A stretch of DNA of 64,000 nucleotides, taken from assembly GCF_000143415.4 (NCBI RefSeq), contig NW_003314267.1, forward strand, positions 868,322-932,321, written 5' to 3'. Within the stretch, counting starts at the first letter, position 1; every line of letters starts with the position of its first letter. Below, one piece after another: positions 19,757 through 43,800 of this stretch. The translations under genes and the position numbers were made by a program. Source of the DNA: Selaginella moellendorffii (taxonomy: Eukaryota; Plantae; Lycopodiophyta). Below the pieces are notes generated by a model that was not told the DNA's origin, searched no databases, and was given only the letters and a program-made list of their open reading frames with translations.

Positions 19757-20805
19757 TTAGTAACCTTTAACGAGTGATACAAGCACAACACGGGGCGGTT
19801 CACCGGGCAACCGGCAATGCATCACCGACAAATTGTCAACAATTACAATGTCACCTTTTTGCCAGTCCACGACGACTTGTTCCTCTTGCAGCACCGCAGC
19901 TATCTTGTCAAGTTCTTCCACCGGGATGGGCGATCCGTCTCCGAACGCAACTCCGCGAGTGACAGGCTCGTCTTTGACAAGGCAAATGCTGTTGAACCAA
20001 GCCATGGAGCCTTTGATCGGGTGCTTGATTGTCGCGGAGAAAGGCCCTCGATAAGCAACCGGCTCGTCATGATCGGATCCATCGGCTTTCCATTCCAGTC
20101 GAGCTCCAATCGCTTCAGCTCTATCAAAAGAATCGAAAAGTTACACACTAGCTCCTTCTCGGTATACCTCTTTTGCGCAATGGCTTTGTCCGTGGTCTGG
20201 AACGCTTCCTCCCACTTTTTTGGAAGTCCGGTGCGGTAGCAAACTCGCTTCTCCTGCAAGAGATTGAAGATCTCGGGCATCTCTTTTGCGAGTCTCTGGT
20301 ACGCGAGCTCGCCGTTGACGAGAGCTGTTCCTCCCCCTCTCGGCGATGGCTGCTCGCAAAAGAACATGACCACGTCCGGATAGACAGAGAGCTGTTCATG
20401 GAGAAACTCGATCAAAATCAAGGATTTCTTACACTCAGATCTTTGAGGAGCCAAGTAACTTACATAGGCCATCTCGTTGTGGAAGGAGATTCGCTTGTCC
20501 ACGGGGTCTTCGTTGGCCGTGAACACGGGGCCCAGGATGTGCTTCCTTGCGCCCCCGCCGTGCTTGTAGTCCATGCTGGTGTAGCCCAGCGCCTCCACGA
20601 CGCTCGCAAAATCCTGGGCATTTGCCAGCTTCCATCCCCGGAGGAGAAGTGCGCCGTGCTCCACCACTTTTCCCCGGATCGAAGCCCTCTTTTGGCGAAT
20701 CAGATGCAAGAGGCTGTGCAGGGAATCGTCGCTGCCATTGTCTGGGACGAGAAGCGCTGGGAATTCATTCATTAGAGAGCCCTTGAGGAGTGGATCAAAT
20801 TTCAT
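19757..20805 (-). CDS. TauD/clavaminate synthase-like Fe(II)/2OG dioxygenase, 3 exons
   Basis: HGALLLRG, VFTANE, FHNEMAY, FFCEQPSPRGGGT, WFNSI, WQKGD, DNLSVMHCR; frames join through GT-AG introns. Confidence 0.88.
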
Positions 20806-21053
20806 TTGACCTTTATAGTCTACAGTTGACTTCAGATTGACTTGGACTTGGACAACGTGTAATTTTTCACAAAGAAAAGTCGAAGAGGTACTCCACATTT
20901 CGCGAAGCTTTTTTTTGGGGCCCAAAACATGTGGTCTACGTAAAATATTATGGAGGTTTAACGCACCACTTTTTAGGGAAGATTTCATAAAAGACAAAAG
21001 AAACAAAGACGTATTGAACAGTGAGTTATAATCAAGCACACCTCTTTTCTCTT

Positions 21054-23873
21054 TCACCTTTGACGCGAGCATATATAGTTTGACATCAACACATAGCTTC
21101 CAGAGCTTGTGTCCACCACTCCCAGTCCCTCCAATCTTTGCAGCGTTTCGAAACAAGTTTTTCCAATAGCATCGTTCTTCCATTTGCAGCACGCATCCAG
21201 CAAACAAATCCACAAAGGTACAACGTTTTCTCTGTCCCCGAGCTCCAGCACCATAGCCAGTGCCTCCTCCAACTTATTCGCCTGCCCAAGCAAATCCACC
21301 ATCACTCCATAGTGTTTGAGACTTGGTTTCAATCCATACAGCGTCACCATCCTCTCAAAGTAGCTCTTTCCTTCCGTGACGAGACCAGCGTGATTGCAAG
21401 CGGAGAGAACACTCAAGAAAGTTATCTCGTTTGGTTCCAGCAGCTCCTGTTCTTCCAAACTCTTTAGTAAATTAAATGCACTGGCGGCATCTCCCTGGCG
21501 ACTGTATCCATCCAGCATCGAGTTCCAAGTGATCAAGTCCTTCTCCTCGTCCCCAACAAGGGAAAATCTTTCTTCTGCCTCAGCAATGCTTCCACATTTG
21601 CCGTAGAAATCGATGATTGAGTTCACCACCATCAAGTTCTTGTGAAGTCCAGCGTTTCGGACCTCGGCCTCGATCTTCCTACCAGTTTCAAGAGCTCCAT
21701 AGTTTCCACAGGCCTTGAGAACTGCCGTGAAAGTTGTGGCATCAGATGATACTCCGGAAGCTCGCATTCTCGAGTAGAGATCGAGAGCTTTCTCGGCATC
21801 ACCACCCTCCGCATAGCCTCGGATGATCGAAGTCCATGCCACCACATTTGGATTGGAAATCTTTTCAAAAACTTGGCAAGCCTTCGCCAGGCTTCCACAC
21901 TTGACGTAAGTATCCACTAAGCTACTCGCTACAAAAACATGTTCTTCCAATCCATATCGCCTCGCATCCAAATGAAACTCTCCAGCTTTCTCCAAACACA
22001 TATTTTTATCCACGAGAGATTGGTTTACGTACAAGGCAGCACAGGCCTTTAGAGCAGCCAAGATAGTCACTGGATTTGGAGGAATTCCTTCTTCGTCGCG
22101 CATTCTATAGTAGAGCTTCAGAGCCATTTCTTCTTGTCCACACTCGGCATAACCCGTGATCATACAGTTCCAGGACACTAGATCTCGCTGTCTCATATTT
22201 TCAAACACTTTGCGAGAGTCTTCCATATCCCCACACTTTGCGTATGTTTCTACAAGCCGGCTAGCGACAAAAACATTGCATTCCAGTCCATCCTTCCAAG
22301 CTTCACGATGGATTTCTCTCACTTTTGATTGTAGCTTGTCAGTTTCCATCTTATGGCATTCTTTGAGCTTGGAACTTAGCTCGTGATCTTTCTCATGTTC
22401 TTTGCTTAAACTCTCAGCTAGACTCACACAAGCCTTGAGCACGGCAAGGTAAGTGATAGCATCTGGTTTCCATCCCTCGTTTCTCATCATCTCAAAGATC
22501 TTCAATCCCATTTTGCCCTCTTTACATTCACCATAGCCTGCTATAAGACAATTCCAAGAGACTGTGTCTTTGTCTACCATACAATCAAAAACTTGCTGGG
22601 CGCCCAGCATTTCCCCACACTTGGCATAAAAATCTAGCACACAATTCCCCATAACAATGTTAGATTCAATCCCACTCCTCACAACTCTTGCTAGAACAAC
22701 TTGTTTGCCATGTTGAGCCTTTGCCACCTTATTATTAGCTCCTGCCAGTGCATGTAATACTGCTGCATATGTGATTGTGTCAGCTTGAATCCCCTTGTCA
22801 AGCATTCGAGAGAAAAACTCAATCGTTCTACCTGTGTCACCTTTCTGGGCGTACCCTGATATCATCCCTGTCCAAGACACCAAGTCGGGAGTCATTATTT
22901 TCTCAAACACACCATTAGCTTCTTCCATGCTTCCACACCTTGCATACATTTCCACCAGCGAGCTCGCTACAAAGGGATGATTTCCATGGCCATGTTTGAG
23001 AGCTTGAGAGTGGATCGATCGCCCCTTTCTCAAAACATCTCTAATCTTCTCTTGTTGATTTTCCATTTGATCTTTCCTTGTTACTAGAACATTCACACAA
23101 GCTTTGAGAGCAGCAACAAATGTAACATTGTTTGGATAGCATTCACTCGATTGCATCTCGTCAAAGAGATCCAAAGCAAGTTCGCCATGGCCAAGCTCTG
23201 CGTACCCCTGGATCATTGCTGTCCATGAAACAACCGTGCGCTGCGTGATCCTGTCAAAAACTCGTCGAGCATCGCCCAAGCTCCCACATTTTGCATACAT
23301 ATCCACCAAAGAGTTTGCCACGAAAATGTGTGTATCATCACCACTGGCTGCTGCTTGGGCATGTAGATCTCGCCCTCGTTTCAAGCTCTGTGCTTTGACA
23401 AGCTCCGCACCAACAAGAGTTTTCTTCTCCTTGTCTGCAAGAGCAATGCAAGCACGTAGAGCAGCAAGATAAGTCACGAAATTTGCTGGAATTCTGGCTT
23501 CTTCTCTCAGCTGCGAGAAGAGCTCTAAGCCAAGCTCGCCATTTTGATTCTCGGCACAAGCTTTGATGATACAATTCCAAACGACGATTGATCTACGCTC
23601 TCGGACACTCTGGAAAACTCTGGTGGCCTCAACCAAGTTTCCACACTTGGAGTACATGTCTATTAACGTGCTCGCAACACGAACGTCAAGGCTTCTCTCA
23701 CCGAACCTGGCTTCTATGCTGTGGATTTTCTTGCCGGATTCTATGTCTTGTGAAATGCTGCAAGCTTTCAATGCGGCCACCACCACTGCAACACTGGGCC
23801 GATCTCCTGTTTCCACAATCCTAATATAAGTTCTGAGTGCAGGTGGAGCACCCCTTGATGGTGGGTTTTGCAT
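21054..23873 (-). CDS. PLS-class pentatricopeptide repeat protein with partial E domain and no DYW; small 5' exons probably lie upstream to ~24330
   Basis: Repeated LVDMYAKCGS..A..VF / VSWTAMI.GYA / TFVAALKAC motifs; HYGVMVDLLG; ends YVLMSN. Confidence 0.93.
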   Translation of the reverse strand: MQNPPSRGAPPALRTYIRIVETGDRPSVAVVVAALKACSISQDIESGKKIHSIEARFGERSLDVRVASTLIDMYSKCGNLVEATRVFQSVRERRSIVVWNCIIKACAENQNGELGLELFSQLREEARIPANFVTYLAALRACIALADKEKKTLVGAELVKAQSLKRGRDLHAQAAASGDDTHIFVANSLVDMYAKCGSLGDARRVFDRITQRTVVSWTAMIQGYAELGHGELALDLFDEMQSSECYPNNVTFVAALKACVNVLVTRKDQMENQQEKIRDVLRKGRSIHSQALKHGHGNHPFVASSLVEMYARCGSMEEANGVFEKIMTPDLVSWTGMISGYAQKGDTGRTIEFFSRMLDKGIQADTITYAAVLHALAGANNKVAKAQHGKQVVLARVVRSGIESNIVMGNCVLDFYAKCGEMLGAQQVFDCMVDKDTVSWNCLIAGYGECKEGKMGLKIFEMMRNEGWKPDAITYLAVLKACVSLAESLSKEHEKDHELSSKLKECHKMETDKLQSKVREIHREAWKDGLECNVFVASRLVETYAKCGDMEDSRKVFENMRQRDLVSWNCMITGYAECGQEEMALKLYYRMRDEEGIPPNPVTILAALKACAALYVNQSLVDKNMCLEKAGEFHLDARRYGLEEHVFVASSLVDTYVKCGSLAKACQVFEKISNPNVVAWTSIIRGYAEGGDAEKALDLYSRMRASGVSSDATTFTAVLKACGNYGALETGRKIEAEVRNAGLHKNLMVVNSIIDFYGKCGSIAEAEERFSLVGDEEKDLITWNSMLDGYSRQGDAASAFNLLKSLEEQELLEPNEITFLSVLSACNHAGLVTEGKSYFERMVTLYGLKPSLKHYGVMVDLLGQANKLEEALAMVLELGDRENVVPLWICLLDACCKWKNDAIGKTCFETLQRLEGLGVVDTSSGSYVLMSNYICSRQR

Positions 23874-26404: not shown

Positions 26405-29770
<3,366 letters not shown>

Positions 29771-29943
29771 CATGTATATTATGATTCTTCCCGGGTTTTT
29801 TTTTTTTCTTCTTTTTTTTTGCTTTCTTATTTGAAGCGGTGTTGTAAACAAGGTTTTGAAGTAAACAGGAATGTAGGAATTATAGCTATATCGTATTAGG
29901 TTTTAGGGTTTACAGGGACTTAGGGTTTATAGGTGTGTGGAAA

Positions 29944-30620
29944 ATGGAGGAGCGTAGCGAGGGCGCCAGCGCGCTGATCGCCGCCAAGATGCTGCAGGGA
30001 TGGGCGCTTCTCGGCGAGCATTGTCCGGCGTGTTTGACGCCACTGATGAGGAACAAGTGAGTGTCTCTATTCGACGGTTTAGTAATTTTGGATGCTTCGT
30101 CTCTAGGGAGAAGAGGATGTATTGCGTTTCTTGCCAGCAATGGGTAGTGCGTGAGAATGAGACTGCCAAGGTCGACAAGGCTGTGAAGATCGAGAAGATT
30201 GAGGCTGGTGAAGAAGATGGAAGAGATGGGAATTCGAGCGCGGCACCTTGGAGAGATAGAGATCAACCTCCACATTTGCTTCCAAAGGTAGTCGCAACTC
30301 ATTTCCATTTTCTCATTCCACTTTTCTTTTGTTCTAGGTGTCTGAGGAGTATTGGTCACCGGAAGTGATAAGCACTGTGGAAGTCAAAATCATGGTAAGA
30401 TCAGTATCGAGTCTTGAATCCCATTTGATTGGTATTTGTTTTGTCAAAGGAGCTGCGCAAAGCCATCGACGAAACTAGAGATGTTGCGCAACTAAAACTG
30501 GTAGGCCAAGTTTCATGTTTTCTTTTTCAACACAAACGCGCAACCTTTGCTTTTCCTTGGCAGCTCATAGATACTTTAACTTCGTGCTTGACATGCCTGG
30601 AGCTTCTCCGGAAAAACTAG
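29944..30620 (+). CDS. ZNRD2/SSSCA1-like zinc-ribbon protein (Auto_anti-p27 domain)
   Basis: ASALIAAKMLQGWALLGEHCPACLTPLMRNK...MYCVSC; short helical C-terminus. Confidence 0.82.
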
Positions 30621-31827
30621 CTCTCGAGCGATTCCGGCGTTCCTTTCCTCAGTCTCCGGGCCATGTAAACTTTCACGTACTCTCCGAAGCTCACTGGGCG
30701 ATACCGGGATGGATGATCCGCGTCGACGAATTCCGGTAGAGGCTTGATCGTCGCCTCCACCGCTGGGTTGAAGAAGCTGGAAATGGAGAGCCTCGCTCTT
30801 TCGGGATTAGCCAAGACTCGGTGCTCAAAACTCTTGTAACGCTTGTTGGTTGCGATCTGGAACAAAGGTAATATGGAAACTTCCATTCCGTTTCATCTTT
30901 TCTTTCTTACCTGCATTTGATCTCCAAAGTTGACGACGAGCGCTCTCCGGTTTGTGCTGATTGGCACCCATGGCGATTCTTCGTTCTTCCTCATTTGCAA
31001 GCCGGGGACATCGTCGATCAAAAGGATATTGAGGAGACCTGGAGAACAAAGAAACAATGAAGAACACGAAGGAGAATGAAAAACAAGTGAACTTTCACCT
31101 TGATCACAGTGGCTGCGAACTCCCAGCACTAGATCCGGCTGGGGGCAAGGGAGGTACCTGTTGAAGAGCAAAAGCTGGTCTAATGGATCGAATTCTCTCT
31201 CAAGACGATCGGGACGTAATCCCAGGCTCTCGGACGCAAGCGATATCACCTTGAAGGCCAAAGCTCGGATTTCCTGGCAATACTTCAGTGCTGCGCTCCT
31301 GAGAAGGAAGAAAGAATGAAGAGAAAAGAAGGAAAAGAAGAAGAAAACCTGAATGATGGAGGATTGCTTGGCCAAGTTTCGAACGTTTCTTCACTGAGTG
31401 GATGGCACTTCCCGACCACCAGGAAGTCCCTCCAGTCCTGGACGCCAGTTTCATCCAAGCGCGTCCCATATCTGGTTCCATTCATCTTTGGCTCGCCACT
31501 AAACAGTTCCATCCTTTGTTCCATCGGCTGTCCAAAGAATTCCAGTGCCGCTCGGACAATCCCCTCCATGGTCTCCTCTGAAACGCCATGGCTTGTGACT
31601 TGGAAGAATCCCCACTCCCTGGAAGCCCGCTCGATCTCGCCCACTATTCGCTGCCTGCCATGGCTGGATTCCAGATCTAGCAAATCTATCACTGGGATTC
31701 TCTCCTCGTCCTGGACCTCACCACTGAATCCATCAGAGAAGCAAACGTAAGCTTCTGGAACTTTGGTCACGCCTTGCTCCACGAGAGTTGGAACCGGAAC
31801 AGCTTGAGCGTACAAAAGAGTTCCCAT
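30617..31827 (-). CDS. 2-oxoglutarate/Fe(II)-dependent dioxygenase (DOXC class)
   Basis: IPVIDL, WGFFQVTSHG, DWRD, NRYLPCPQPDLVLGVRSHCD, VNFGDQMQI, YKSFEHRV, RLS. Confidence 0.94.
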
Positions 31828-32120
31828 GTCGGAAAAGGAAACAGAACAAACCTCTATCACACATTCTTTTGATCTTTCTCAGTAGAACTGACCTTTATTA
31901 TTATGACAAATATCGTGACCTTTTTGGGTAAAATATTGTGGAGCTTTCTAAACAGAAACCAATGTGAGGGAGAACCCTTTGATAAATCCCATTCTTCCTT
32001 TGGAAGCTCGTTGCTGATGCACGGAGACAGTTAAAAACGTAAGTAAAAGGATTAACTCTAGGCAAACGTACATTGAGAATGTCATCCATTGTCAATTGAG
32101 AGTAATCCATCATAAGCGGC

Positions 32121-32313
32121 ACTATTGAGCACCTCATCGTATTCGAACAGCTGTTTACGGGCTTCAAAATAATAGTTTTCGACTTTTCTTTGAGCCTCGT
32201 CCAGCGATTTCGTGAGCATTTTTGACTCGATCGGCAAATCCTCGATTTAGAAAAAACCAACAAAATGACAACTACCTCACCTTTATCTTTTCACCACCAA
32301 ATATCCGAAATAT
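32121..32313 (-). pseudogene. Isolated fragment of a plastid SecA gene (two exon pieces plus intron)
   Basis: Minus strand reads IFRIFGGEKIK|GT-intron...[42 protein letters not shown], a hallmark plastid/cyanobacterial SecA segment; no other SecA sequence flanks it. Confidence 0.8.
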
Positions 32314-32637
32314 GGTACCTTCTGCGGCCGCTGCCTGTAAGAACCTTTATGAGTAAAATTTTATGGAGCAAAAACAAATGTGAGGGAGAACCCTATCACT
32401 CAAAATACACCCTAAACCCTAAACCCCTAAGTATATTTTAGGTATATTCATTACCAAATTATTTAAATTAAAATTTTCATTAATAAAATTTAGATATCTT
32501 ATTTTAAATCATTATTTTTAGTTTTAATTAATTTTAATTTTCATAAGCAGGATGGTAGTGGATATACTAAGAATATTTTTGGATATTCTAGAATATTTTA
32601 CCATCTAACAGTTGTTATTCATTTATATTAGTCTTGT

Positions 32638-32673
32638 ATTTATAAATTATAAACATGTTTATAATTTATAAAT
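32638..32673. repeat. Perfect 36-bp AT-rich palindrome, with a degenerate copy at ~32735-32770
   Basis: ATTTATAAATTATAAACATGTTTATAATTTATAAAT is its own reverse complement. Confidence 0.85.
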
Positions 32674-33455
32674 TTTCTTAAATCCTTTCTAGCATATTCT
32701 TTGTTATTCTATCATCTGGAATAACTTAATCTTGTTTTTATAAATTACAAACATGCTTATAATTATAAACTTTATTTGATCAATTGGATTAATAAGTAAG
32801 AATAACACTCTATTTTGATACAAAATGGTAAAAATTTATTTTTAACACCAAATTTATTTTCTCACAAATAAAATTTCTCCTTCTCACAATTTCCATTAAG
32901 AAAGGTTTTCCTCAGTTTGTTAACATTTCTTCTATAGTATAGCTTGAGGAATAGCTTCTCGAGCTTTTGTCTCTTTCTTAAACTTACATAAGTGCTCCAC
33001 ATTTGCAAATTTGAGTAGTGCAAGAGATTGAGATTTATTTTTGAATCAAGTCAAATTTCTCTCCCCTTGTGTTTTTAAGTGTTTGATTATAATTGCTTTT
33101 ACATTTGGGAGAGTTTGAATACTCCAAGCTGTTTGGATATTATGGCTTTGGTCTTCAAAATAATATTTAGTTAAAGCTAAAAAACTTTTGCATTAGGTTT
33201 TGTAAATGGCTCTTGATGCTGGGAGGACACTCCTTCCCACAATATACTAAGGTTTGCAAGTAAGAAGGTTGTGTTTTTACTCAATGCTTGTTTCGACACA
33301 GAGAACATAAATCAAAAGAAAGCTTGCCTTAAGAAAATAGTCTTCTATTGGGCGTAGGGCTTTGCTAGGAAATGGCGGATTTCCACTAACAAGTTTGATA
33401 AGGTAAAACAAAATCAATGAAATTTGTCATTAATTAAGTTGATATGCACCACAGA

Positions 33456-33967
33456 GGCTTACGCACTGGTTGGAGAGCAAATACTATTCCAGCAATGAGA
33501 GGCACGAGGTTTCGAGGGCAGCAGAACTTGCACGCCTCACATTGGGTGTTTTTGACGAACCAGTGGGGAAACTTGGGATAACACCCAAAGCATCACAGGT
33601 TGTGACGCTTCTCACTCGAGACCAATTCTGGGACTTGTGTTCGGATATGTTGGACGAGCGATCCAAGCAGCACGAGGAATGGATTGAGCAGACCTTCACT
33701 GATGACCAAGATCTCAACTTCGTGCGCTACTTGAGGGAGGAGGAACGAAAGAACTCTCATTTTGGAAGTTTGGAACCACAAAGATTCACTAGTTTATTAT
33801 TGCTTTCGACAAATCCAGAAAGAGCTCGATCCATAGTCAATCTCTCCGACAGCGCTCGCATCCGCAAGGAAAGTAATGCCAACCAGATTGAGGTTTGCAA
33901 ACTCACTGTTAGCTGCAGACTCCAGAGCTATGGTAGAGATCTGGTTCATTTTGACTTCAAGGCCTGA
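33456..33967 (+). CDS. Hypothetical protein exon, unknown function; 3' end overlaps the protease gene antisense
   Basis: ~170-codon open frame after a CAG acceptor, with small candidate upstream exons (~33200-33400); no recognised motif. Confidence 0.3.
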
Positions 33968-34878
33968 CTTGTAACCTCCCTTTGTGTTTGATATCTCTTC
34001 GCCAGTGAAGCCAAGAGATTTCAAGGTTGAATTTGCCAGCCAGACTCCAGGAGATCCTAGAATTTATGACAAAGATTTCATTAGACAGCGAAAGTGGAAG
34101 CCAATATTGACAATTACCAGTGTCGAGAATAGCTGGGACTTCAATCTTTGTGTTCCCGTTCTCAATTTCCACGAGAAGCCAAGGCAATCCACCAAGTATT
34201 TTCCCTCTTGTAGCCCCTCTGTACAAAGCAATGTTTCATACTTTTGAAATTTATAAATCCAATAGCATACCTTGGAATGCTAGCAGTCTCCAGTGTTGGT
34301 CGATCGATCAATCTGATCTGCCACGACTCCTCCGCATCAGAAAAGTCCAGTAACATTCTTGTTTTAGCAGCAAAGAAGTAATTTGACCCCAAGACGGAGC
34401 ACGGGCTGTCATATGCAACAAGAGCTCGCACATCCACACCGTTCACTTGAAGCCTTATGATCTCTCCATCGCTTGCCTCATGCCCTTGCCCAAAGACAAT
34501 GTTCATGTCTTTACCAGCAATGACTGTTCCCAGAGCACCAGTGTCAATTGCAAACTCAATATAGCCGCTTCTCTCTGCGTCGACATACAATGTTGACGTG
34601 AAGTGATACTGATCCGTTACTTTGGCTTCATACACTGTTGCTGGAAAAGAAGAAAAAAGAAAATAAGGAGAGAAAAGAAACGAAGATTAATATTTTAACA
34701 CCTTTGGCTCGAGCTGTCACTAGACTTGACTTTGCAAACGCCAAATCTGTGACAGAGCACATATGTCAATCGAGGGAGAAAGTGAGAAAAAAAAAAACAA
34801 CAAACCAGAATGTAGAAGGGATGTTCTCCTGCAGGGCAGACCCAAGAATCCAGTGAAAACTCCTGGATGTCCTGTCAT
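33797..34878 (-). CDS. Tandem two-domain retropepsin-like (clan AA) aspartic protease, 5 exons, ~282 aa minimum; may extend 5' to 35746
   Basis: Exons 34878-34806, 34746-34702, 34640-34271, 34218-34118 and 34056-33797 join in frame through GT-AG introns of 52-61 nt. Domain 1: FAIDTGALGTVI...SVLGSNYF. Domain 2: AILDTGSPGVWL...NLVGITFL...IDY. Confidence 0.75.
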
Positions 34879-34991
34879 AGTATTATATAGATGGTAAAAT
34901 CAAGTTAAGGCCAACTTGTACTTAATGGTTTCTCTATCGCGTGTGTGAAGAGACGTCCCCGTGGGTTTGTAGAGCCTCTAACAGATAATGG

Positions 34992-35746
34992 CTATCTCCA
35001 TAGATATGACGACGCTATGATTCAATAGTCTATGCTCTTGAGAGTACTTTCGATAACTAACCTGGACGTGGAGAGTTCCAGCCTGATGGCTCTATCCCAA
35101 GAAAGCGCGGTGATTTAGAGTCTGGAAGTGTGTCGAGTTAGAAAAGTTCTCGGGGGAACGAGTAACAAACCAGTACGAGCTTTGCCTGCTAGCAGGAGAG
35201 CTTGTGGCGATTTTGAAAAACGCGCACGACCTGTGCCATGCAAGAGGCTAGTTAAAAACGAAAAGTTCTTCAAACACAGATCAACTAACGAGCGCTCGAA
35301 GCTTGGCCTGCTTTTCCATGATTGAGAATCGTTTGTCCAGTCCAGGCCGAAAGTCCTGTGGCTGAGAGGAATAAAACGTTAGAAGGTGAAGCCATGAGAT
35401 TAAATGCCAAAACCAGAACTTAGAGCTTGGCCTGGTGGTGAACCTGGAATGCCTGACAGCGATCTAGCAAAGAACGCTGTGTTTGTGTGTGAGAAAGATT
35501 GATTAAATCGTCTTGTGAAAACTGAACTAACCAGAAACTCGGGCTTGGCCTCCAGGTGACGTTGATCTGGCATAAGCTCCTGCTAGGAAAATTAGAAGGT
35601 CGTCTTGATAGATCGAAAGCTCCAAGATTCACCACGAAGTCCCGCGTCGCAGATAATCTGGAGGCTCCCGGATCCGCAATGGAAGTTTCGAGTGCTAGCG
35701 CCTTCGCTTCCAATGGGAATGCCATGCAAGAGCTCCACACCGCCAT
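34992..35746 (-). CDS. Micro-exon-rich ORF with transit-peptide-like start; either a separate small gene or the 5' part of the protease gene
   Basis: MAVWSSCMAFPLEAK... exon 35746-35532, then six small GT-AG-bounded exons in consistent phase; repeated RPSxxF motif; in-frame TAG at 34994-34992. Confidence 0.5.
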
Positions 35747-35910
35747 CGCCAATCCACGCTCACGCTCTCTTCTTCTTGAATTACCAATGAAATTCATCCC
35801 GCTACTTCACGTTTTACTGAAGCGCCAACTTTCAACGCTTTTGACTTGCGTAGAGGTCGAATCTCGCCAGTCTGGTAAGTCCTTCTAGGGTTCTAAAGAC
35901 AGAGTTGGAG

Positions 35911-38581
<2,671 letters not shown>

Positions 38582-38744
38582 TGTCGAAGAGATTGTCCAA
38601 GAGCATAGGAAATGGAAGCATGAAATCTATAGTTTATAGAAACTTTAGATTGTCTCTACAAGAGAAGAAATGTTTTACATGCCTAGTCTTAAGATGCCAA
38701 GAATCTCCATTTTGCGCTCCAGGGTTTTAGGGTTTCCAGGGAGG

Positions 38745-40461
38745 ATGGCGGCGGCGAGGGAGCCACAGCTCGTCCAGCCTCCAAAGGTATGGCTAGGCTT
38801 AGATTCGAGAGGGCGGGAGCGACATTTGGGATTTTTTCTCGCAGGGCACGCGAGATTTCAAGCCCGAGCAAATGATGGTGAGGAAGAGAGTGTTTGGCAT
38901 CGTCTCCAAGGTTTTCGAGCAGCACGGAGCCGTCTCTCTCGACACTCCCGTGTTTGAGCTCCGGGAAACTCTCACGGGAAAGTATGGAGAGGACTCAAAG
39001 CTCATCTACAACCTCGAAGATCAGGCTAGTGAAAAAAACTTTGCTTTCCGTTTGTTGCTTACAATTTTTTTTCTGTCTTTCAGGGTGGTCAGCTCCTTTC
39101 GCTCCGATACGATCTCACTGTTCCTTTTGCTCGATATCTGGCATCGAACAAGGTGACCAGCATGAAACGCTACCAGATCGGCAAAGTTTACCGGCGTGAC
39201 AATCCTTCTCGGGGGAGGTATCGCGAGTTCTATCAGTGTGACTTCGATATCGCGGGGCAGTTCCCGGCCATGATCGCGGATGCCGAGGTGATCAAGGTCG
39301 TGGTGGAGCTGCTTGATTCTCTCGACGTAGGGGACTACCAGGTGAGAAAATACTTTTTCGTGCTTTTCTTTTCTCTCGTTGCTTGATTCCAATCTTTGTC
39401 ACAGGTGAAAGTGAATCACAGAAAGCTTCTGGATCTAGTGCTCGCGTCTTGTGGAGTTCCCGAAGATAAGTTCAAGTCCATTTGCTCCGCCATCGACAAG
39501 CTGGATAAATCTCCCTGGGACAAAGTTCGAACAGAAATGGTGAGCCTTTTTGTTCGTGTTTTTACATGTGTGTTTGACAAGAGCTTGATTTCTACCAGGT
39601 GGAGGAGAAAGGCTTGTCACCGGAAGTGGCTGACAAAGTCGGTGAGCAAGTCTCCAAGAAAGGCAATGCGACGGACATGCTTGCTTACTTGAACGCGTAT
39701 CTCGGAGAGTCCCAGAATGCAACAGAGGTTCTCGAAGGCATGGAGACGCTCTTTGGCTTTTTGGAAGCTGGGAACTGCTTGCATCGCGTGGTTTTCGACC
39801 TTAGCCTTGCTCGAGGCCTGGATTACTACACCGGTGTCATCTTTGAGGCCGTTTTCACAGGCTCCACTCAGGTAATCTCGTCGTTTCTTCTTTCTGTTTT
39901 TCATCTTTGTTTGTATACTTCTTTTGAAGGTTGGATCGATTGCTGCTGGTGGTCGCTACGACAACCTCGTGAGCATGTTTGGCGGCAAGGAAGTGCCGGT
40001 TGTGGGACTTAGCCTGGGAATCGAGCGCGTTCTTCTCATACTCGAAGAGCGGGAGAAGGCAAACAAGGTGCGTGTTTCTCTCAGGATTTCTCATTACAAT
40101 CACTACTCTCTCTCCCTCTCTCGCACAGGTTGCAAGAACGAAAGAGACACAGGTTTTGATACTCTACCTCGGCAAAAACATGCACAAGCAAGCCTTTCGA
40201 CTGGCGAGCGAGCTGTGGGCTGCGTCACTCAACGTAGAGTTTGACGCCATCGCCACGTCCAAGCTCAAGAACAAGCTGGATATGGCGGGCAAATCCTTCA
40301 TCCCCTTCGTCGTCGTCGTTGGCGAGGACGAAGAAAAGAAAGGCGTGGTGCAGCTCAAGGAGATTGTCGTGAAGAAATCTCAAGAGGAAGAAAACAAACA
40401 AAAAGAGGAAATCCCGAGAAACGAACTAGCCAAGACCATCTTGTCCAGATTGCAAAAATAA
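38745..40461 (+). CDS. Histidyl-tRNA synthetase, eukaryotic cytosolic type
   Basis: [29 protein letters not shown]-like segment ([11 protein letters not shown]), [39 protein letters not shown]. Confidence 0.95.
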
Positions 40462-40815
40462 ATCTTTCGATCATTAGTCTCGACCTTTAACCTTTGCTCT
40501 TGGAATATTCTAGCCTTTGCCTTTAGAGTATTCTTTTGGCTTTAAACAGTTTTTGCCCTAATCCGGGGCTGGGGCGATCTGACGGCTGATGGGCGCGCGA
40601 GAGCTTTGGCTTGAGTGGTGGAATCTGGCGCTAGGGCTGAATCCCGGCGTGGATCCTGGGAGCTCTAGCTAGGGTTTGGGAGCGGGGCAGGGATTCTTGC
40701 GGAGAATGCGCTACGGGCGTGGATTCTACTGGCAGGCGCTTTTGCGAGCTGGGAGGCTGCTGCTCCATCTCAAAATGCCGTAGTACCGTGCCCGCGGGGG
40801 ATCGGCATTGCCGCA

Positions 40816-43800
40816 ATGCCGGCTGCCACAGCGGCCAAGCTGATTGTGGATGCGCTGCTGCAGCGCTTTCTGCCGCTCGCGCGACGCAGGATCGACACGG
40901 CGCAGGCACAGGTAATCTTTCGGGGATGATCGACGAGTGATTGATCTTCGCTTGGAATTTCTTTCTTTCTTTCTCTAGGATGGGCAATATCTTCGTGCGT
41001 CTGATGCTGCCTACGAGCAAGTGTTGGATTCGCTGGCTATGGTGGCTCGTCACACTCCAATACCTCTTCTGGAGGCACTTCTTAAGTGGAGAGAAAGGTG
41101 AGTGGTCTTATCTAAAACGAACAAGAATTGATGTGATCGGCAATGCTGTCTCGTATGAGCAGTGAATCCCCGAAAGGAGCCAACGATGCTTCGACTTTTC
41201 AAAGAAAAGTGAGTTGGAACTCCACTTTTTTCTCTCTTCCTGTGCTGAAACTTAGATTCGTGTAGCTGGCCGTGGAGTGTATATTTTGCTCAGCGTGTAT
41301 ACGTTTTGTGGAGTGCTGTCCACAAGAAGGGCTCACAGGTATTTCACCAGTGCCTTATTTCCAAGTCCTAGACACTCATACATTCTTCTATGGACAGAAA
41401 CACTGTGGAATGGTCTGGAGAATTTTGTTTTCGATTGGCTTATCAATGCCGACAGGTATCTGGTTTTTCTGATAAACTGTGATGAACCAACACGGTCTTT
41501 TATTTCAGAGTTGTTAGCCAGACAGATTATCCCTCCTTATTTGATCTTCGCGGATTGCTCTTGGACCTCGTTGCTCAATTGCTTGGCGCTTTGTCCAGAA
41601 TAAGGCAAGTTGAAATTCCTTCAGTGTTAACTATAACATGAAACTATACAGATTTAGCTCCATAACTGAGCGTTTCTTTAACGAGTTGAATACTCGTCGC
41701 ATTGATACGAACGTGACAAGAAGCGAAACATTAAGCATCATCCATGGAATGCGGTATCTCAAGCTCGGGGTATTTGAGGAAATGGTTCTGTAGTCAATTG
41801 GGTAATCCTTTTTTTTTTTTTTTTTTTTTTTTGCAGGTTTCATCACTTGGAGGACTTAATGCTAGCACGTCATTTGTAGCCAAAGCCAATCCTTTGAATC
41901 GAATGCCAGCGAAGAAGAAGAGTGAGCTCCATCATGCGCTGTGCAACATGCTTTCAAGTGTTCTTGCCCCTCTCACAGACGGTGGGAGTGGCCAGTGGCC
42001 GCCTGCAGGAGTTGATCAGGCACTGACTCTGTGGTATGATGCTGTTCTTCGAATTCGGAACCAACTTATGCACTGGATGGAGAGGCAAAGCAAGCATGTT
42101 AACGTAAGTAAAAGATTTTCCAAATGAATTCGTCGTCAACAACGTTTACAGGTTGGATACCCTCTTGTTACAAGTCTTTTGTGCCTAGGCGATCCAGAGT
42201 ATTTTATAAGTTCATTCAATCCTCACCTCGATCAACTGTATAAACTGTTACGGGTGAGCAGGGACGTTAAAATTCAGTATTGCTCTAAACCTTTTTTTTG
42301 TCTTAGGAGAAAAATAACAGATCGGTAGCATTGGAATGTCTTCACAGAGTGCTTCGCTTCTATTTGAATGTGTACGCTGAAAGTCAACCGCAAAATCGGG
42401 TATGGATGACCTTGCACAGTGTTACAGCTCAATTGTTGAGCTGTTTGAAAAAAGGCTTTTTTACGCTGGATGTTCAACACGAGAAGCTTGTCGACCTTTG
42501 CGTGACAATAGCCGAGAGTAATCTGGACTTCGCGATGAATCACGTGATATTGGAACTTCTTCGGACAGAGAACCTTAGCGAGGCTAAAGTCATCGGTCTG
42601 AGAGGACTTTTGGCTATAGTTTCGTCCACTTCGGCCGAGCAACGTACAGATGATTCTCGGCTCTCTTTGACGTCATTTCGTGGATCACCGACATCTTCTT
42701 GGTCATCAGCAACCTCGGCCGTTTTTACGTCATCTCGTCACAGTGCTGCAGCTCGTGTTGATATTCCTTCCAGCACTCATGATATTGGACCATATATACC
42801 AAAAGTGCGAGCTGCTCTTGGTTCTATTATCAAAGCATGTCACAGCACTTATGGGGGCGCATTGCTTACTTCCTCGAAGGCAACGCTGGGTAAGTTTTGC
42901 GACTCTTTTCGACAGTTTTTTCTCACAGTCACGTAATTTTGACAGATGCTCTGAGCAAAGAAAAGCCTCAAGGCTGGCTTGTGTTCCGCTGGGCTCTGAA
43001 ATGTGTACCACATTTGATACCAGAGCAGTGGCGCAACGATCGGATGACGGAAATTATCCCGGTTTATGCGATCAGTGTTGAACCTGGTGTTCGTGAGGAA
43101 GCCGTGCAGGTTCTTTTTAGAACTGTTCGGGACCTTCCTCAAAGCCGCTTTGCCGTCATGCGAGGGATGGCAAATTTTATATTTCGGCTCCCGGACGACT
43201 TTCCAATACTGATCCGGATTTCTCTGGATCGTCTCGTACAGCTTTTAAGCTCTTGGCGCGTGTCTCTTTTGGAAGAGCTTTCGGACAGCAAAGACAACTA
43301 TAACAAAAGTTCACGTCATGCAGCACCATCGGAAGCCCGGTTTCATCCCTCGGGTTTAGATGCAGTGGGTCTTATATTTCTGTGCTCGGTAGACGTTCAA
43401 ATTCGGCATACGGCTCTGGAACTTTTGAGGGCCGTTCGAGCTCTCTACAATGATCTCTCAAGGATGTCTTCAAAGGAGAAGAACAATAAAAGGCCACATC
43501 CAGACCATACTTACGTGATCGACGTATTCGAGGAAGCTGGTGTATGTATATTTTCGTTATTGTAATGATTTCGTTCTAAAGTTCTTTTCTCCAGGACGAC
43601 ATTGTCCAGCAATGCTACTGGGACTGTGGAAGATGGTACGAAATGAGAAAAGAGTGGGATGCCATTCCACCAGAACTATCGCTGCAAACCGTACTGGAGA
43701 GCTCGGACAAAGGTCGTTGGGGACGATGTTTAAGTGAACTTGTTAAGTATGCAGCAGAGCTTTGTCCGTCAGCTGTTCAAGGTGCAAGGTGCGTTTTTCT

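What the first reader, a model, noticed from the sequence alone, without database searches (positions are those of the whole stretch)
33797..34878. Intron-containing gene for a single-chain, tandem two-domain retropepsin-like aspartic protease
Seen in sequence: the ORF track splits this gene into three fragments, but five exons splice in frame through canonical 52-61-nt GT-AG introns, one of which splits the Gly codon of the second DTG. The product has two complete retropepsin-type modules, IEFAIDTGALGTVI...SVLGSNYF and VPAILDTGSPGVWL...NLVGITFL..IDY. No gag, RT, integrase or LTR lies nearby. Established knowledge: retropepsins and Ddi1 are normally homodimers of one ~110-aa domain, and plant pepsin-family (A1) proteases are much larger, disulfide-rich and secreted. 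Inference: this is a domesticated or horizontally acquired two-lobed clan AA protease in which both catalytic Asp residues sit on one chain, possibly plastid-targeted (Ser/Thr/Arg-rich N-terminus ending VTARA).
Basis: partly seen in the sequence, partly recalled or inferred. Interest (0 to 1): 0.8.

Follow-up and report, generated by a model that had tools for sequence, protein, structure and literature searches.

The report
Spikemoss two-lobed retropepsin-like protease gene
A weakly expressed, intron-containing spikemoss (Selaginella) gene encodes a small protein in which two retrovirus-type aspartic protease halves sit on one chain and probably fold onto each other like a miniature pepsin; this layout is unusual for a plant gene but is common in uncharacterised bacterial proteins.

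Summary
On the minus strand, five exons (34878-33797) join through four GT-AG introns of 59, 61, 52 and 61 nt into an 849-nt frame of 282 codons, with DTG at residues 72 and 195. Intron 4 splits the second Gly codon. Spliced transcript contigs confirm introns 3 and 4, and one raw RNA read confirms intron 4. Exons 1-2 have no RNA cover, so the N-terminus and the plastid-targeting idea stay open.

The window is the second haplotype of Selaginella moellendorffii GL377621.1. There the gene is annotated as hypothetical protein SELMODRAFT_422290 (469 aa, 98% identical), with an N-terminal extension that is probably spurious. Between haplotypes the frame is intact and dN/dS is 0.27.

Lobe 2 passes Pfam PF13650; lobe 1 does not pass any model. 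The ESM Atlas model of the allele matches bacterial tandem-PF13650 proteins (TM 0.71-0.75). Folded as separate chains, the lobes dock through both DTG loops (ipSAE 0.77, best control 0.00).

An exhaustive search with lobe 1 found no other relative. No retrotransposon genes or LTRs lie nearby. Origin (retrotransposon domestication or bacterial-type transfer) is unresolved, and catalysis is inferred. The scan noted a similar gene on another piece of this genome (s1-432164), probably the allele.

The parts
34806..34878 (-). It is the least certain part of the model.
   Evidence: Splices in frame, and the ATG is kept in the other haplotype. There is no RNA cover. It has 2 non-synonymous and 1 synonymous difference. 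The JGI model reads it in another frame.
34747..34805 (-). Intron 1 (59 nt, GT..AG). It contains an alternative in-frame start, ATG 34762-34760.
   Evidence: The ORF list shows a minus-strand ORF starting at ATG 34762 that runs in exon 2's frame. No RNA cover.
34702..34746 (-). Exon 2 (45 nt), encoding the Ser/Thr/Ala-rich linker that ends in VTARAK
Evidence: No RNA cover.
34641..34701 (-). Intron 2 (61 nt, GT..AG, GC 0.26)
   Evidence: It is needed because exon 3's frame has no ATG before an upstream stop codon (read directly). Not covered by RNA.
34271..34640 (-). Exon 3 (370 nt), encoding the whole of lobe 1: DTG at 34545-34537 (D72) and VLG at 34395-34387
   Evidence: Contig X1 covers 34302-34477. 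The ESM Atlas model of the allele's lobe 1 matches retropepsin-like models at TM 0.63-0.72. No Pfam hit.
34219..34270 (-). Intron 3 (52 nt, GT..AG)
   Evidence: Skipped in the X2 contig (depth 15.5). One X7 read runs about 15 nt into it unspliced.
34118..34218 (-). Exon 4 (101 nt), encoding the start of lobe 2 up to D195-T196 and the first base of G197
   Evidence: Covered by contigs X1 and X2 and by raw reads.
34057..34117 (-). Intron 4 (61 nt, GT..AG), which splits the Gly codon of the second DTG
   Evidence: Skipped in contigs X1 and X2 and in one raw RNA read of X8.
33797..34056 (-). Exon 5 (260 nt including the TAA stop at 33799-33797), encoding the rest of lobe 2 with LVG at 33886-33878
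   Evidence: Covered by contigs X1 and X2. The allele's lobe 2 hits PF13650 at 31.2 bits, above the 24.3-bit cut-off.
34883..34889 (-). TATATAA motif 5 nt upstream of ATG 34878. If it is the TATA box, transcription would start downstream of that ATG and translation would begin at ATG 34762.
   Evidence: Read directly. This is inference only; no transcript 5' ends were seen.

Best explanation
This is a genuine, weakly expressed nuclear gene of Selaginella moellendorffii, the second-haplotype allele of SELMODRAFT_422290. It encodes a soluble protein of about 260-285 aa made of two dissimilar retropepsin-type (clan AA) lobes on one chain.

Each lobe carries one Asp-Thr-Gly loop (D72, D195) and one hydrophobic-hydrophobic-Gly psi-loop element. 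The lobes are predicted to fold back on each other as an intramolecular pseudo-dimer, with the two DTG loops face to face. One chain would then form the complete catalytic dyad that ordinary retropepsins form only by homodimerising. That makes it a miniature pepsin-like endopeptidase.

Shown: splicing of introns 3 and 4, allelic conservation, the motifs, family membership of lobe 2, and the predicted fold and docking.

Inferred: catalysis, the substrate, the cellular location, the true start codon and the evolutionary origin. The origin is most likely an old capture of a retroelement-type or bacterial-type protease that later gained introns.
For: - Gene model and motifs.
- Splicing: spliced contigs and one spliced RNA read for introns 3 and 4.
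- Synteny: the locus matches GL377621.1 at 96-98% over 14 kb, with the same flanking genes.
- Conservation: the frame is intact in both haplotypes with a 9-nt in-frame indel. dN/dS is 0.27 (8 non-synonymous, 9 synonymous; binomial P = 0.009), and dS of 0.046 is close to the intron divergence.
- Family: PF13650 at E = 3.8e-7, 31.2 bits against a 24.3-bit cut-off, on lobe 2.
- Fold: the ESM Atlas model of residues 215-469 of the allele aligns over about 230 residues, at TM 0.71-0.75, to bacterial 284-457-aa proteins with tandem PF13650. Lobe 1 alone gives TM 0.63-0.72 to single retropepsin-like models. Language-model features of lobe 1 point to the PF13975/PF13650 families.
- Docking: lobe-to-lobe ipSAE is 0.77 against a best control of 0.00. 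That mark was reached by 51 of 78 solved complexes and 2 of 108 mismatched pairs. The runs agree in at least 97% of their contacts, and the partner pLDDT is at least 86. The interface includes both DTG loops, both N-terminal strands and both segments after the hydrophobic-hydrophobic-Gly motif.
- Context: no RT, integrase or LTR within about 10 kb, and GC content like the surroundings.
Against: - Lobe 1 has no significant hit to any Pfam or NCBIfam model. The best is RVP at E = 0.22.
- The two lobes show no sequence similarity beyond the motifs.
- My own AlphaFold2 single-sequence models are unusable (pLDDT 39 and 34). All fold evidence therefore comes from ESM-type models, which may reproduce retropepsin dimers from memory.
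- Expression is very low: two read pairs per roughly 9 million records read, and one of those pairs is unspliced.
- No relative other than the allele was found among 1.84 billion cluster representatives. Conservation beyond this species is therefore unshown.
- The dN/dS estimate rests on only 17 substitutions.
- The 5' end is unresolved.
Confidence: 0.65

Rival explanations
1. It is a decaying relic of a retrotransposon protease region with tandem protease domains. It is transcribed at noise level and has no host function.
For: - It is an orphan at sequence level.
- Expression is very low, and one of the two read pairs is unspliced.
- PF13650 is one of the models used to annotate plant Gypsy proteases.
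- Unchecked earlier notes in this genome describe Gypsy polyproteins with tandem protease-like domains, and a silent tandem-retropepsin ORF judged to be a relic (s1-398810, s1-433186).
Against: - It has four introns, at least two of which are removed in transcripts.
- The frame is intact in both haplotypes, dN/dS is 0.27 and the only coding indel is in frame.
- Both DTG motifs and both psi-loop Gly motifs are kept.
- It is a single-copy syntenic locus among ordinary genes, with no gag, RT, integrase or LTR nearby.
Confidence: 0.15
2. It is a folded two-lobed protein that no longer cuts proteins. It would act as a binding or inhibitor-like pseudo-protease, in the way that pepsin-fold xylanase inhibitors do.
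For: - Lobe 1 is very divergent from all profile models.
- The flap regions cannot be aligned to known enzymes.
- Lobe 2 gives a weak hit to TAXi_N (E = 0.069).
Against: Both catalytic Asp-Thr-Gly triplets are intact in all alleles seen, whereas inactive homologues usually lose them. The predicted docking puts the two loops together.
Confidence: 0.1
3. On origin: the gene came by horizontal transfer from a bacterium that carried a tandem Asp_protease_2 gene, and it later gained plant introns. It did not come from a retroelement.
For: The best full-length structural matches are bacterial single-chain tandem PF13650 proteins of 284-300 aa, the same size and lobe order.
Against: - The Atlas is dominated by bacterial metagenomes, so the taxonomy of the hits says little.
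- tblastn found no bacterial or phage relative, and no NCBIfam model matched.
- GC content and intron structure are typical of the host.
- Fusion of two retropepsin lobes can arise repeatedly.
Confidence: 0.2
4. On the gene model: the true product is the long 469-aa form annotated on the other haplotype, or a 263-aa form that starts at ATG 34762. Under either model the reader's 282-aa form, with its putative transit peptide, is wrong at the N-terminus.
For: - The JGI/NCBI model uses a donor 4 nt downstream and reads exon 1 in another frame.
- ATG 34762 is in frame with exon 2.
- A TATATAA motif lies only 5 nt upstream of ATG 34878.
- No RNA covers this part.
Against: - Against the long form: about 69 of its codons lie in a 390-bp stretch that is absent from the window haplotype. 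Its remaining upstream exons show roughly 4 non-synonymous to 2 synonymous changes. They have no Pfam domain.
- Nothing decides between the 34878 and 34762 starts.
Confidence: 0.4

Closest known systems
Bacterial single-chain proteins with two Asp_protease_2 (PF13650) domains, with or without PDZ domains. These are ESM Atlas clusters of 55-355 members, mainly Bacteroidota and Pseudomonadota. I found no paper describing them.
   Same: Two retropepsin-type lobes on one chain of about 285-300 aa. Full-length predicted-structure match at TM 0.71-0.75 over about 230 residues.
   Different: No detectable sequence homology. The Selaginella gene has four spliceosomal introns and sits among plant genes. 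It has no PDZ domain or signal peptide.
Homodimeric retropepsins and retropepsin-like enzymes: HIV protease (MEROPS A2), Rickettsia APRc (PMC4140852) and Pseudomonas RloA/RimB (PMC12239564)
   Same: DTG catalytic loop plus hydrophobic-hydrophobic-Gly psi-loop in a lobe of about 110-125 aa. The predicted interface runs through the DTG loops and terminal strands. Lobe 2 passes PF13650.
   Different: Those enzymes have one lobe per chain and must dimerise (PMC12239564, PMC2761423). Here two unlike lobes are fused, so the dyad would form within one molecule.
Pepsin family A1, including bacterial pepsin homologues (PMC2761423)
   Same: A bilobed single chain in which each lobe contributes one Asp. 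[quoted passage not shown]
   Different: About 282 aa rather than more than 320 aa. No PF00026 hit and only a marginal plasmepsin match (E = 0.49). No signal peptide, propeptide or disulphide pattern.
Protease domains of plant Ty3/Gypsy LTR retrotransposons, and tandem-retropepsin relics noted elsewhere in this genome (s1-433186, s1-398810)
   Same: PF13650 is a model used for these proteases. The tandem protease-domain theme recurs in Selaginella according to unchecked scan notes.
   Different: No gag, RT, integrase or LTR here. The gene is intron-containing, spliced and constrained. No sequence link to any annotated polyprotein was found with lobe 1.

Membership tests
Clan AA retropepsin-like aspartic peptidase lobe (Pfam PF13650 / PF13975 / PF00077) | Asp-Thr/Ser-Gly catalytic motif preceded by hydrophobic residues, in each lobe | tested here: met
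   FAIDTGAL (D72) and AILDTGSP (D195). Kept in the other haplotype.
Clan AA retropepsin-like aspartic peptidase lobe (Pfam PF13650 / PF13975 / PF00077) | Hydrophobic-hydrophobic-Gly psi-loop motif 50-65 residues after the Asp (PMC2761423) | tested here: met
   VLG at residues 122-124 (52 residues after D72) and LVG at 254-256 (61 residues after D195).
Clan AA retropepsin-like aspartic peptidase lobe (Pfam PF13650 / PF13975 / PF00077) | Profile score above the curated Pfam gathering threshold, lobe 2 | tested here: met
   PF13650 at 31.2 bits against a 24.3-bit cut-off, E = 3.8e-7, on the 98%-identical allele. The split exon pieces from the window alone give no hit.
Clan AA retropepsin-like aspartic peptidase lobe (Pfam PF13650 / PF13975 / PF00077) | Profile score above the curated Pfam gathering threshold, lobe 1 | tested here: not met
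   No family at E <= 1 for exon 3. Only RVP at E = 0.22, 12.3 bits against a 20.7-bit cut-off.
Clan AA retropepsin-like aspartic peptidase lobe (Pfam PF13650 / PF13975 / PF00077) | Retropepsin beta-barrel fold with apposed catalytic loops | tested here: inconclusive
   The ESM Atlas model matches at TM 0.63-0.75, and ESMFold2 docking scores 0.77 against controls of 0.00, with the DTG loops in the interface. AlphaFold2 single-sequence models failed, and no comparison with solved structures was possible.
Clan AA retropepsin-like aspartic peptidase lobe (Pfam PF13650 / PF13975 / PF00077) | Aspartic endopeptidase activity | not testable with these tools
   Needs recombinant protein and D-to-N mutants.
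Pepsin family A1 (PF00026) | Profile match to PF00026, size over 320 aa, signal peptide or propeptide, conserved disulphides | tested here: not met
   No PF00026 hit. Plasmepsin match only at E = 0.49 around DTGS. 282 aa, three Cys and no hydrophobic N-terminal segment.
LTR-retrotransposon / retroviral pol protease | Embedded in or adjacent to gag, RT, RNase H and integrase, and flanked by LTRs | tested here: not met
   The neighbours are HSP70, His-tRNA synthetase, 2OG oxygenase, kinase and PPR genes. No direct or inverted repeats of 40 nt or more flank the gene.
Ddi1-type (MEROPS A28, PF09668) | PF09668 match with ubiquitin-like or UBA domains | tested here: not met
   PF09668 is absent from the Pfam results at E <= 10.
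Bacterial tandem Asp_protease_2 proteins | Sequence homology to the family, not only the same architecture | tested here: not met
   The architecture and predicted fold match. No sequence relative was found by word search, NCBIfam, or tblastn of bacterial genomes and phages.

The most novel reading that the evidence does not exclude
A land plant keeps a working 'mini-pepsin'. This would be a single-chain aspartic protease made by fusing two retropepsin-type lobes, independently of the pepsin A1 family. It would have arisen either by domestication of a retroelement protease or by transfer of the bacterial tandem-PF13650 type. That would give a natural eukaryotic example of the duplication-and-fusion route long proposed for the origin of pepsins (PMC2761423).
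Probability: 0.3. Interest if true: 0.65.

Novelty: new variant of a known kind. Interest (0 to 1): 0.45.

Why it matters
Pepsins are thought to have arisen when a gene for a one-lobed, dimerising aspartic protease duplicated and fused (PMC2761423). Natural intermediates, meaning small single chains with two retropepsin-sized lobes, have not been described in the literature I could search. Predicted-structure databases nevertheless show many uncharacterised bacterial examples.

An expressed, constrained, intron-bearing example in a plant would show that this fusion also became fixed as a eukaryotic host gene. It would also offer a compact system for testing how two unlike lobes build one active site. 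The practical impact is modest: the gene is lineage-restricted and barely expressed, its function is unknown, and the allele is already in databases as a hypothetical protein.

Tried and rejected
- **Exon pieces against Pfam:** no hits. Lobe 2 is split by intron 4, so this blank was uninformative. The intact allele was needed.
- **Word-based protein searches:** three length ranges (96-304, 258-820 and 140-446 aa) returned only the allele P0001 or nothing.
- **Exhaustive phmmer with lobe 1:** returned only P0001 and a repetitive 1440-aa bacterial surface protein with eight weak stretches. I reject the latter as a low-complexity or repeat artefact.
- **AlphaFold2 single-sequence folds:** lobe 1 reached pLDDT 39 and both lobes together pLDDT 34. 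These are too poor for fold search, so no Foldseek or VIA comparison with the PDB was run.
- **PDB sequence search:** only marginal hits to plasmepsin and NirA.
- **NCBIfam:** only a chance TrmY hit.
- **tblastn of 185,579 bacterial and archaeal genomes and of phage genomes:** nothing.
- **Lobe 1 against lobe 2:** no significant similarity (z = 0.4 against shuffles). A recent internal duplication is rejected.
- **tblastn of the protein against the window:** no paralogue in the window.
- **Findings look-up by sequence:** blank.
- The 98%-identical allele P0001 stood in for it.

Full report
**1. The observation**

The region was read on both strands. The mechanical ORF list breaks the minus strand into three overlapping pieces: 34162-34635, 33957-34226 and 33797-34024.

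The exons are 34878-34806, 34746-34702, 34640-34271, 34218-34118 and 34056-33797. They join through four GT...AG introns of 59, 61, 52 and 61 nt, which are AT-rich (GC 0.26-0.37). The result is an uninterrupted frame of 849 nt: 282 codons plus TAA.

- DTG occurs at residues 72-74 and 195-197.
- Hydrophobic-hydrophobic-Gly motifs follow each DTG, at residues 122-124 and 254-256.

Together with the DTG loop, this second motif defines the psi-loop of clan AA lobes (PMC2761423).

**2. RNA evidence**

One run search and one read-laying run were available.

- Contigs from two studies lack intron 4 (34057-34117).
- The deeper contig (X2, depth 15.5) also lacks intron 3 (34219-34270).
- One raw RNA-seq read of X8 spans the intron 4 junction.
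- One raw read of X7 is unspliced across parts of introns 3 and 4. It could be pre-mRNA, intron retention or DNA carry-over.

Depth is very low, at two read pairs per roughly 9 million records read. Nothing sampled lies upstream of 34477. The 3' three exons are therefore confirmed as a spliced transcript. Exons 1-2, introns 1-2 and the start codon are not confirmed.

**3. Whose gene it is**

An exhaustive HMMER search of 1.84 billion cluster representatives with lobe 1 (exon 3, 122 aa) returned one true relative. This is P0001, 469 aa and 98% identical. A repetitive bacterial protein also scored, and I discount it.

P0001 is 'hypothetical protein SELMODRAFT_422290 [Selaginella moellendorffii]', with PF13650 precomputed. 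It lies on GL377621.1 (locus L001). L001 aligns to window 28015-41741 at 96-98% identity, in the same order and with the same neighbours: MOR2/PAG1, His-tRNA synthetase and HSP70 upstream, and 2OG-Fe(II) oxygenase and a kinase downstream. I read the window as the other haplotype of the same locus. That the assembly holds both haplotypes is my recollection of the genome paper and was not checked here. The window's own allele is not in the protein collection.

**4. The gene model at the 5' end**

The annotated 469-aa model shares exons 2-5. It reads exon 1 in a different frame, through a donor 4 nt further on, and adds about 185 residues from upstream mini-exons. Several points count against this extension:

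- About 69 of those codons lie in a roughly 390-bp stretch that is simply absent from the window haplotype.
- The remaining upstream exons show about 4 non-synonymous to 2 synonymous differences.
- They have no Pfam domain.

I take the extension to be a prediction artefact or 5' UTR.

A third possibility is ATG 34762, inside 'intron 1' and in frame with exon 2, which would give a 263-aa product. A TATATAA motif sits only 5 nt upstream of ATG 34878. If it is the promoter's TATA box, transcription would start downstream of that ATG and favour this third model.

The N-terminus has no hydrophobic signal-like core, and no targeting predictor was available.

**5. Is it constrained?**

Projecting the five-exon model onto L001 gives an intact 285-codon frame.

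- The only coding indel is 9 nt and in frame.
- There are 17 substitutions: 8 non-synonymous and 9 synonymous.
- NG86 dN is 0.0126 and dS is 0.046, so dN/dS is 0.27.
- A binomial test against the expected 76% non-synonymous sites gives P = 0.009.
- dS is similar to intron divergence, at 8 substitutions in 233 nt.
- Three of the eight replacements fall in the first 36 codons, so the two lobes are the constrained part.

The X2 contig is a third allele. It shares four of the L001 differences, of which three are synonymous. This is modest but consistent evidence for purifying selection.

**6. What the protein is**

- *Sequence.* The window's exon pieces alone hit nothing in Pfam. In the intact allele, lobe 2 matches PF13650 Asp_protease_2 at E = 3.8e-7 and 31.2 bits, against a gathering score of 24.3 bits. 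It also gives weaker hits to gag-asp_proteas, PE-PGRS_C and TAXi_N. Lobe 1 gets only RVP at E = 0.22. NCBIfam and PDB sequence searches gave nothing meaningful. The two lobes resemble each other only at the motifs, as is also true of the two lobes of pepsin (PMC2761423).
- *Predicted structure.* My two AlphaFold2 single-sequence jobs failed, with pLDDT 39 and 34. The ESM Atlas holds its own model of P0001. Residues 215-469 align over about 230 residues, at TM 0.71-0.75, to bacterial proteins of 284-457 aa that carry two PF13650 domains, some with PDZ domains. Lobe 1 alone (215-345) aligns at TM 0.63-0.72 to single retropepsin-like or 'clan AA aspartic protease' models. Language-model features of lobe 1 point the same way.
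- *Docking.* I gave the two lobes as separate chains to the complex test. The score was ipSAE 0.77 in all three runs, against a best control of 0.00. That mark was reached by 51 of 78 solved complexes and 2 of 108 mismatched pairs. The runs agree in at least 97% of their contacts, and the partner pLDDT is at least 86. The confident interface is symmetric. [quoted passage not shown] This is the retropepsin dimer interface. The pass may partly reflect the model's memory of retropepsin dimers, so it shows likeness, not activity.

**7. What it is not**

- *Not a pol gene.* Ordinary plant genes flank it. No direct or inverted repeat of 40 nt or more brackets it, and its GC content matches the surroundings.
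- *Not a pepsin A1 member.* There is no PF00026 hit, the protein is 282 aa, it has three Cys and it has no signal peptide.
- *Not Ddi1-like.* PF09668 does not match.

**8. Origin**

Origin is unresolved. PF13650 is one of the profiles used for plant Gypsy proteases. Unchecked notes of this scan mention Selaginella Gypsy polyproteins with tandem protease-like domains, and a silent tandem-retropepsin ORF. That makes domestication of a retroelement plausible.

The full-length structural matches are bacterial tandem proteins. The Atlas is mostly bacterial, however, and tblastn found no bacterial or phage relative. Under either origin the four introns would have been gained later, so the gene is unlikely to be a very recent arrival. 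Yet no homologue outside the species was detectable with lobe 1.

**9. Verdict**

The core interpretation, a single-chain two-lobed clan AA protease-like host gene, is supported at the level of sequence motifs, one Pfam-significant lobe and predicted structure. Plastid targeting and the mode of origin are untested.

This is a new variant of a known kind. The lobes are ordinary retropepsin-type lobes, and the tandem architecture is common, though undescribed, in bacteria. As a spliced plant gene it is unusual.

No paper mentions the gene. The scan noted a like gene on another piece of this genome (s1-432164). It is probably the allele on GL377621.1, but I could not verify that.

Noticed in passing
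window 33470-33967 (+): A 165-codon plus-strand ORF converges on the protease gene and overlaps its last exon antisense. It has no Pfam hit and no RNA cover in the runs laid. It is probably not a gene.
   Followed up: partly
window 32322-33757: An AT-rich intergenic stretch (GC down to 0.19). It is only 87.6% identical between the two haplotypes, against 96-98% elsewhere.
   Followed up: no
window about 35675-35689, against L001 6058-6450: A roughly 390-bp insertion/deletion between haplotypes, about 800 bp upstream of the gene. It removes about 69 codons of the annotated N-terminal extension of SELMODRAFT_422290.
   Followed up: partly
window 35896-36381 (-): An ORF antisense to the HSP70 gene hits Pfam PF10712 'NAD-GH'. 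From memory, this family is suspected to be built from antisense translations of HSP70 genes, so the hit is probably an artefact and not a glutamate dehydrogenase.
   Followed up: no
window 21057-23873 (-) and 19903-21213 (-): An intronless 939-aa PPR protein gene lies next to a TauD/TfdA-family dioxygenase ORF. These are ordinary plant genes, noted only as context.
   Followed up: no
run X2 ('organism B'), window 33792-34340: A spliced contig carries four of the nine differences that L001 shows in that span. It is therefore a third, recombinant or intermediate, allele under a different organism label.
   Followed up: partly
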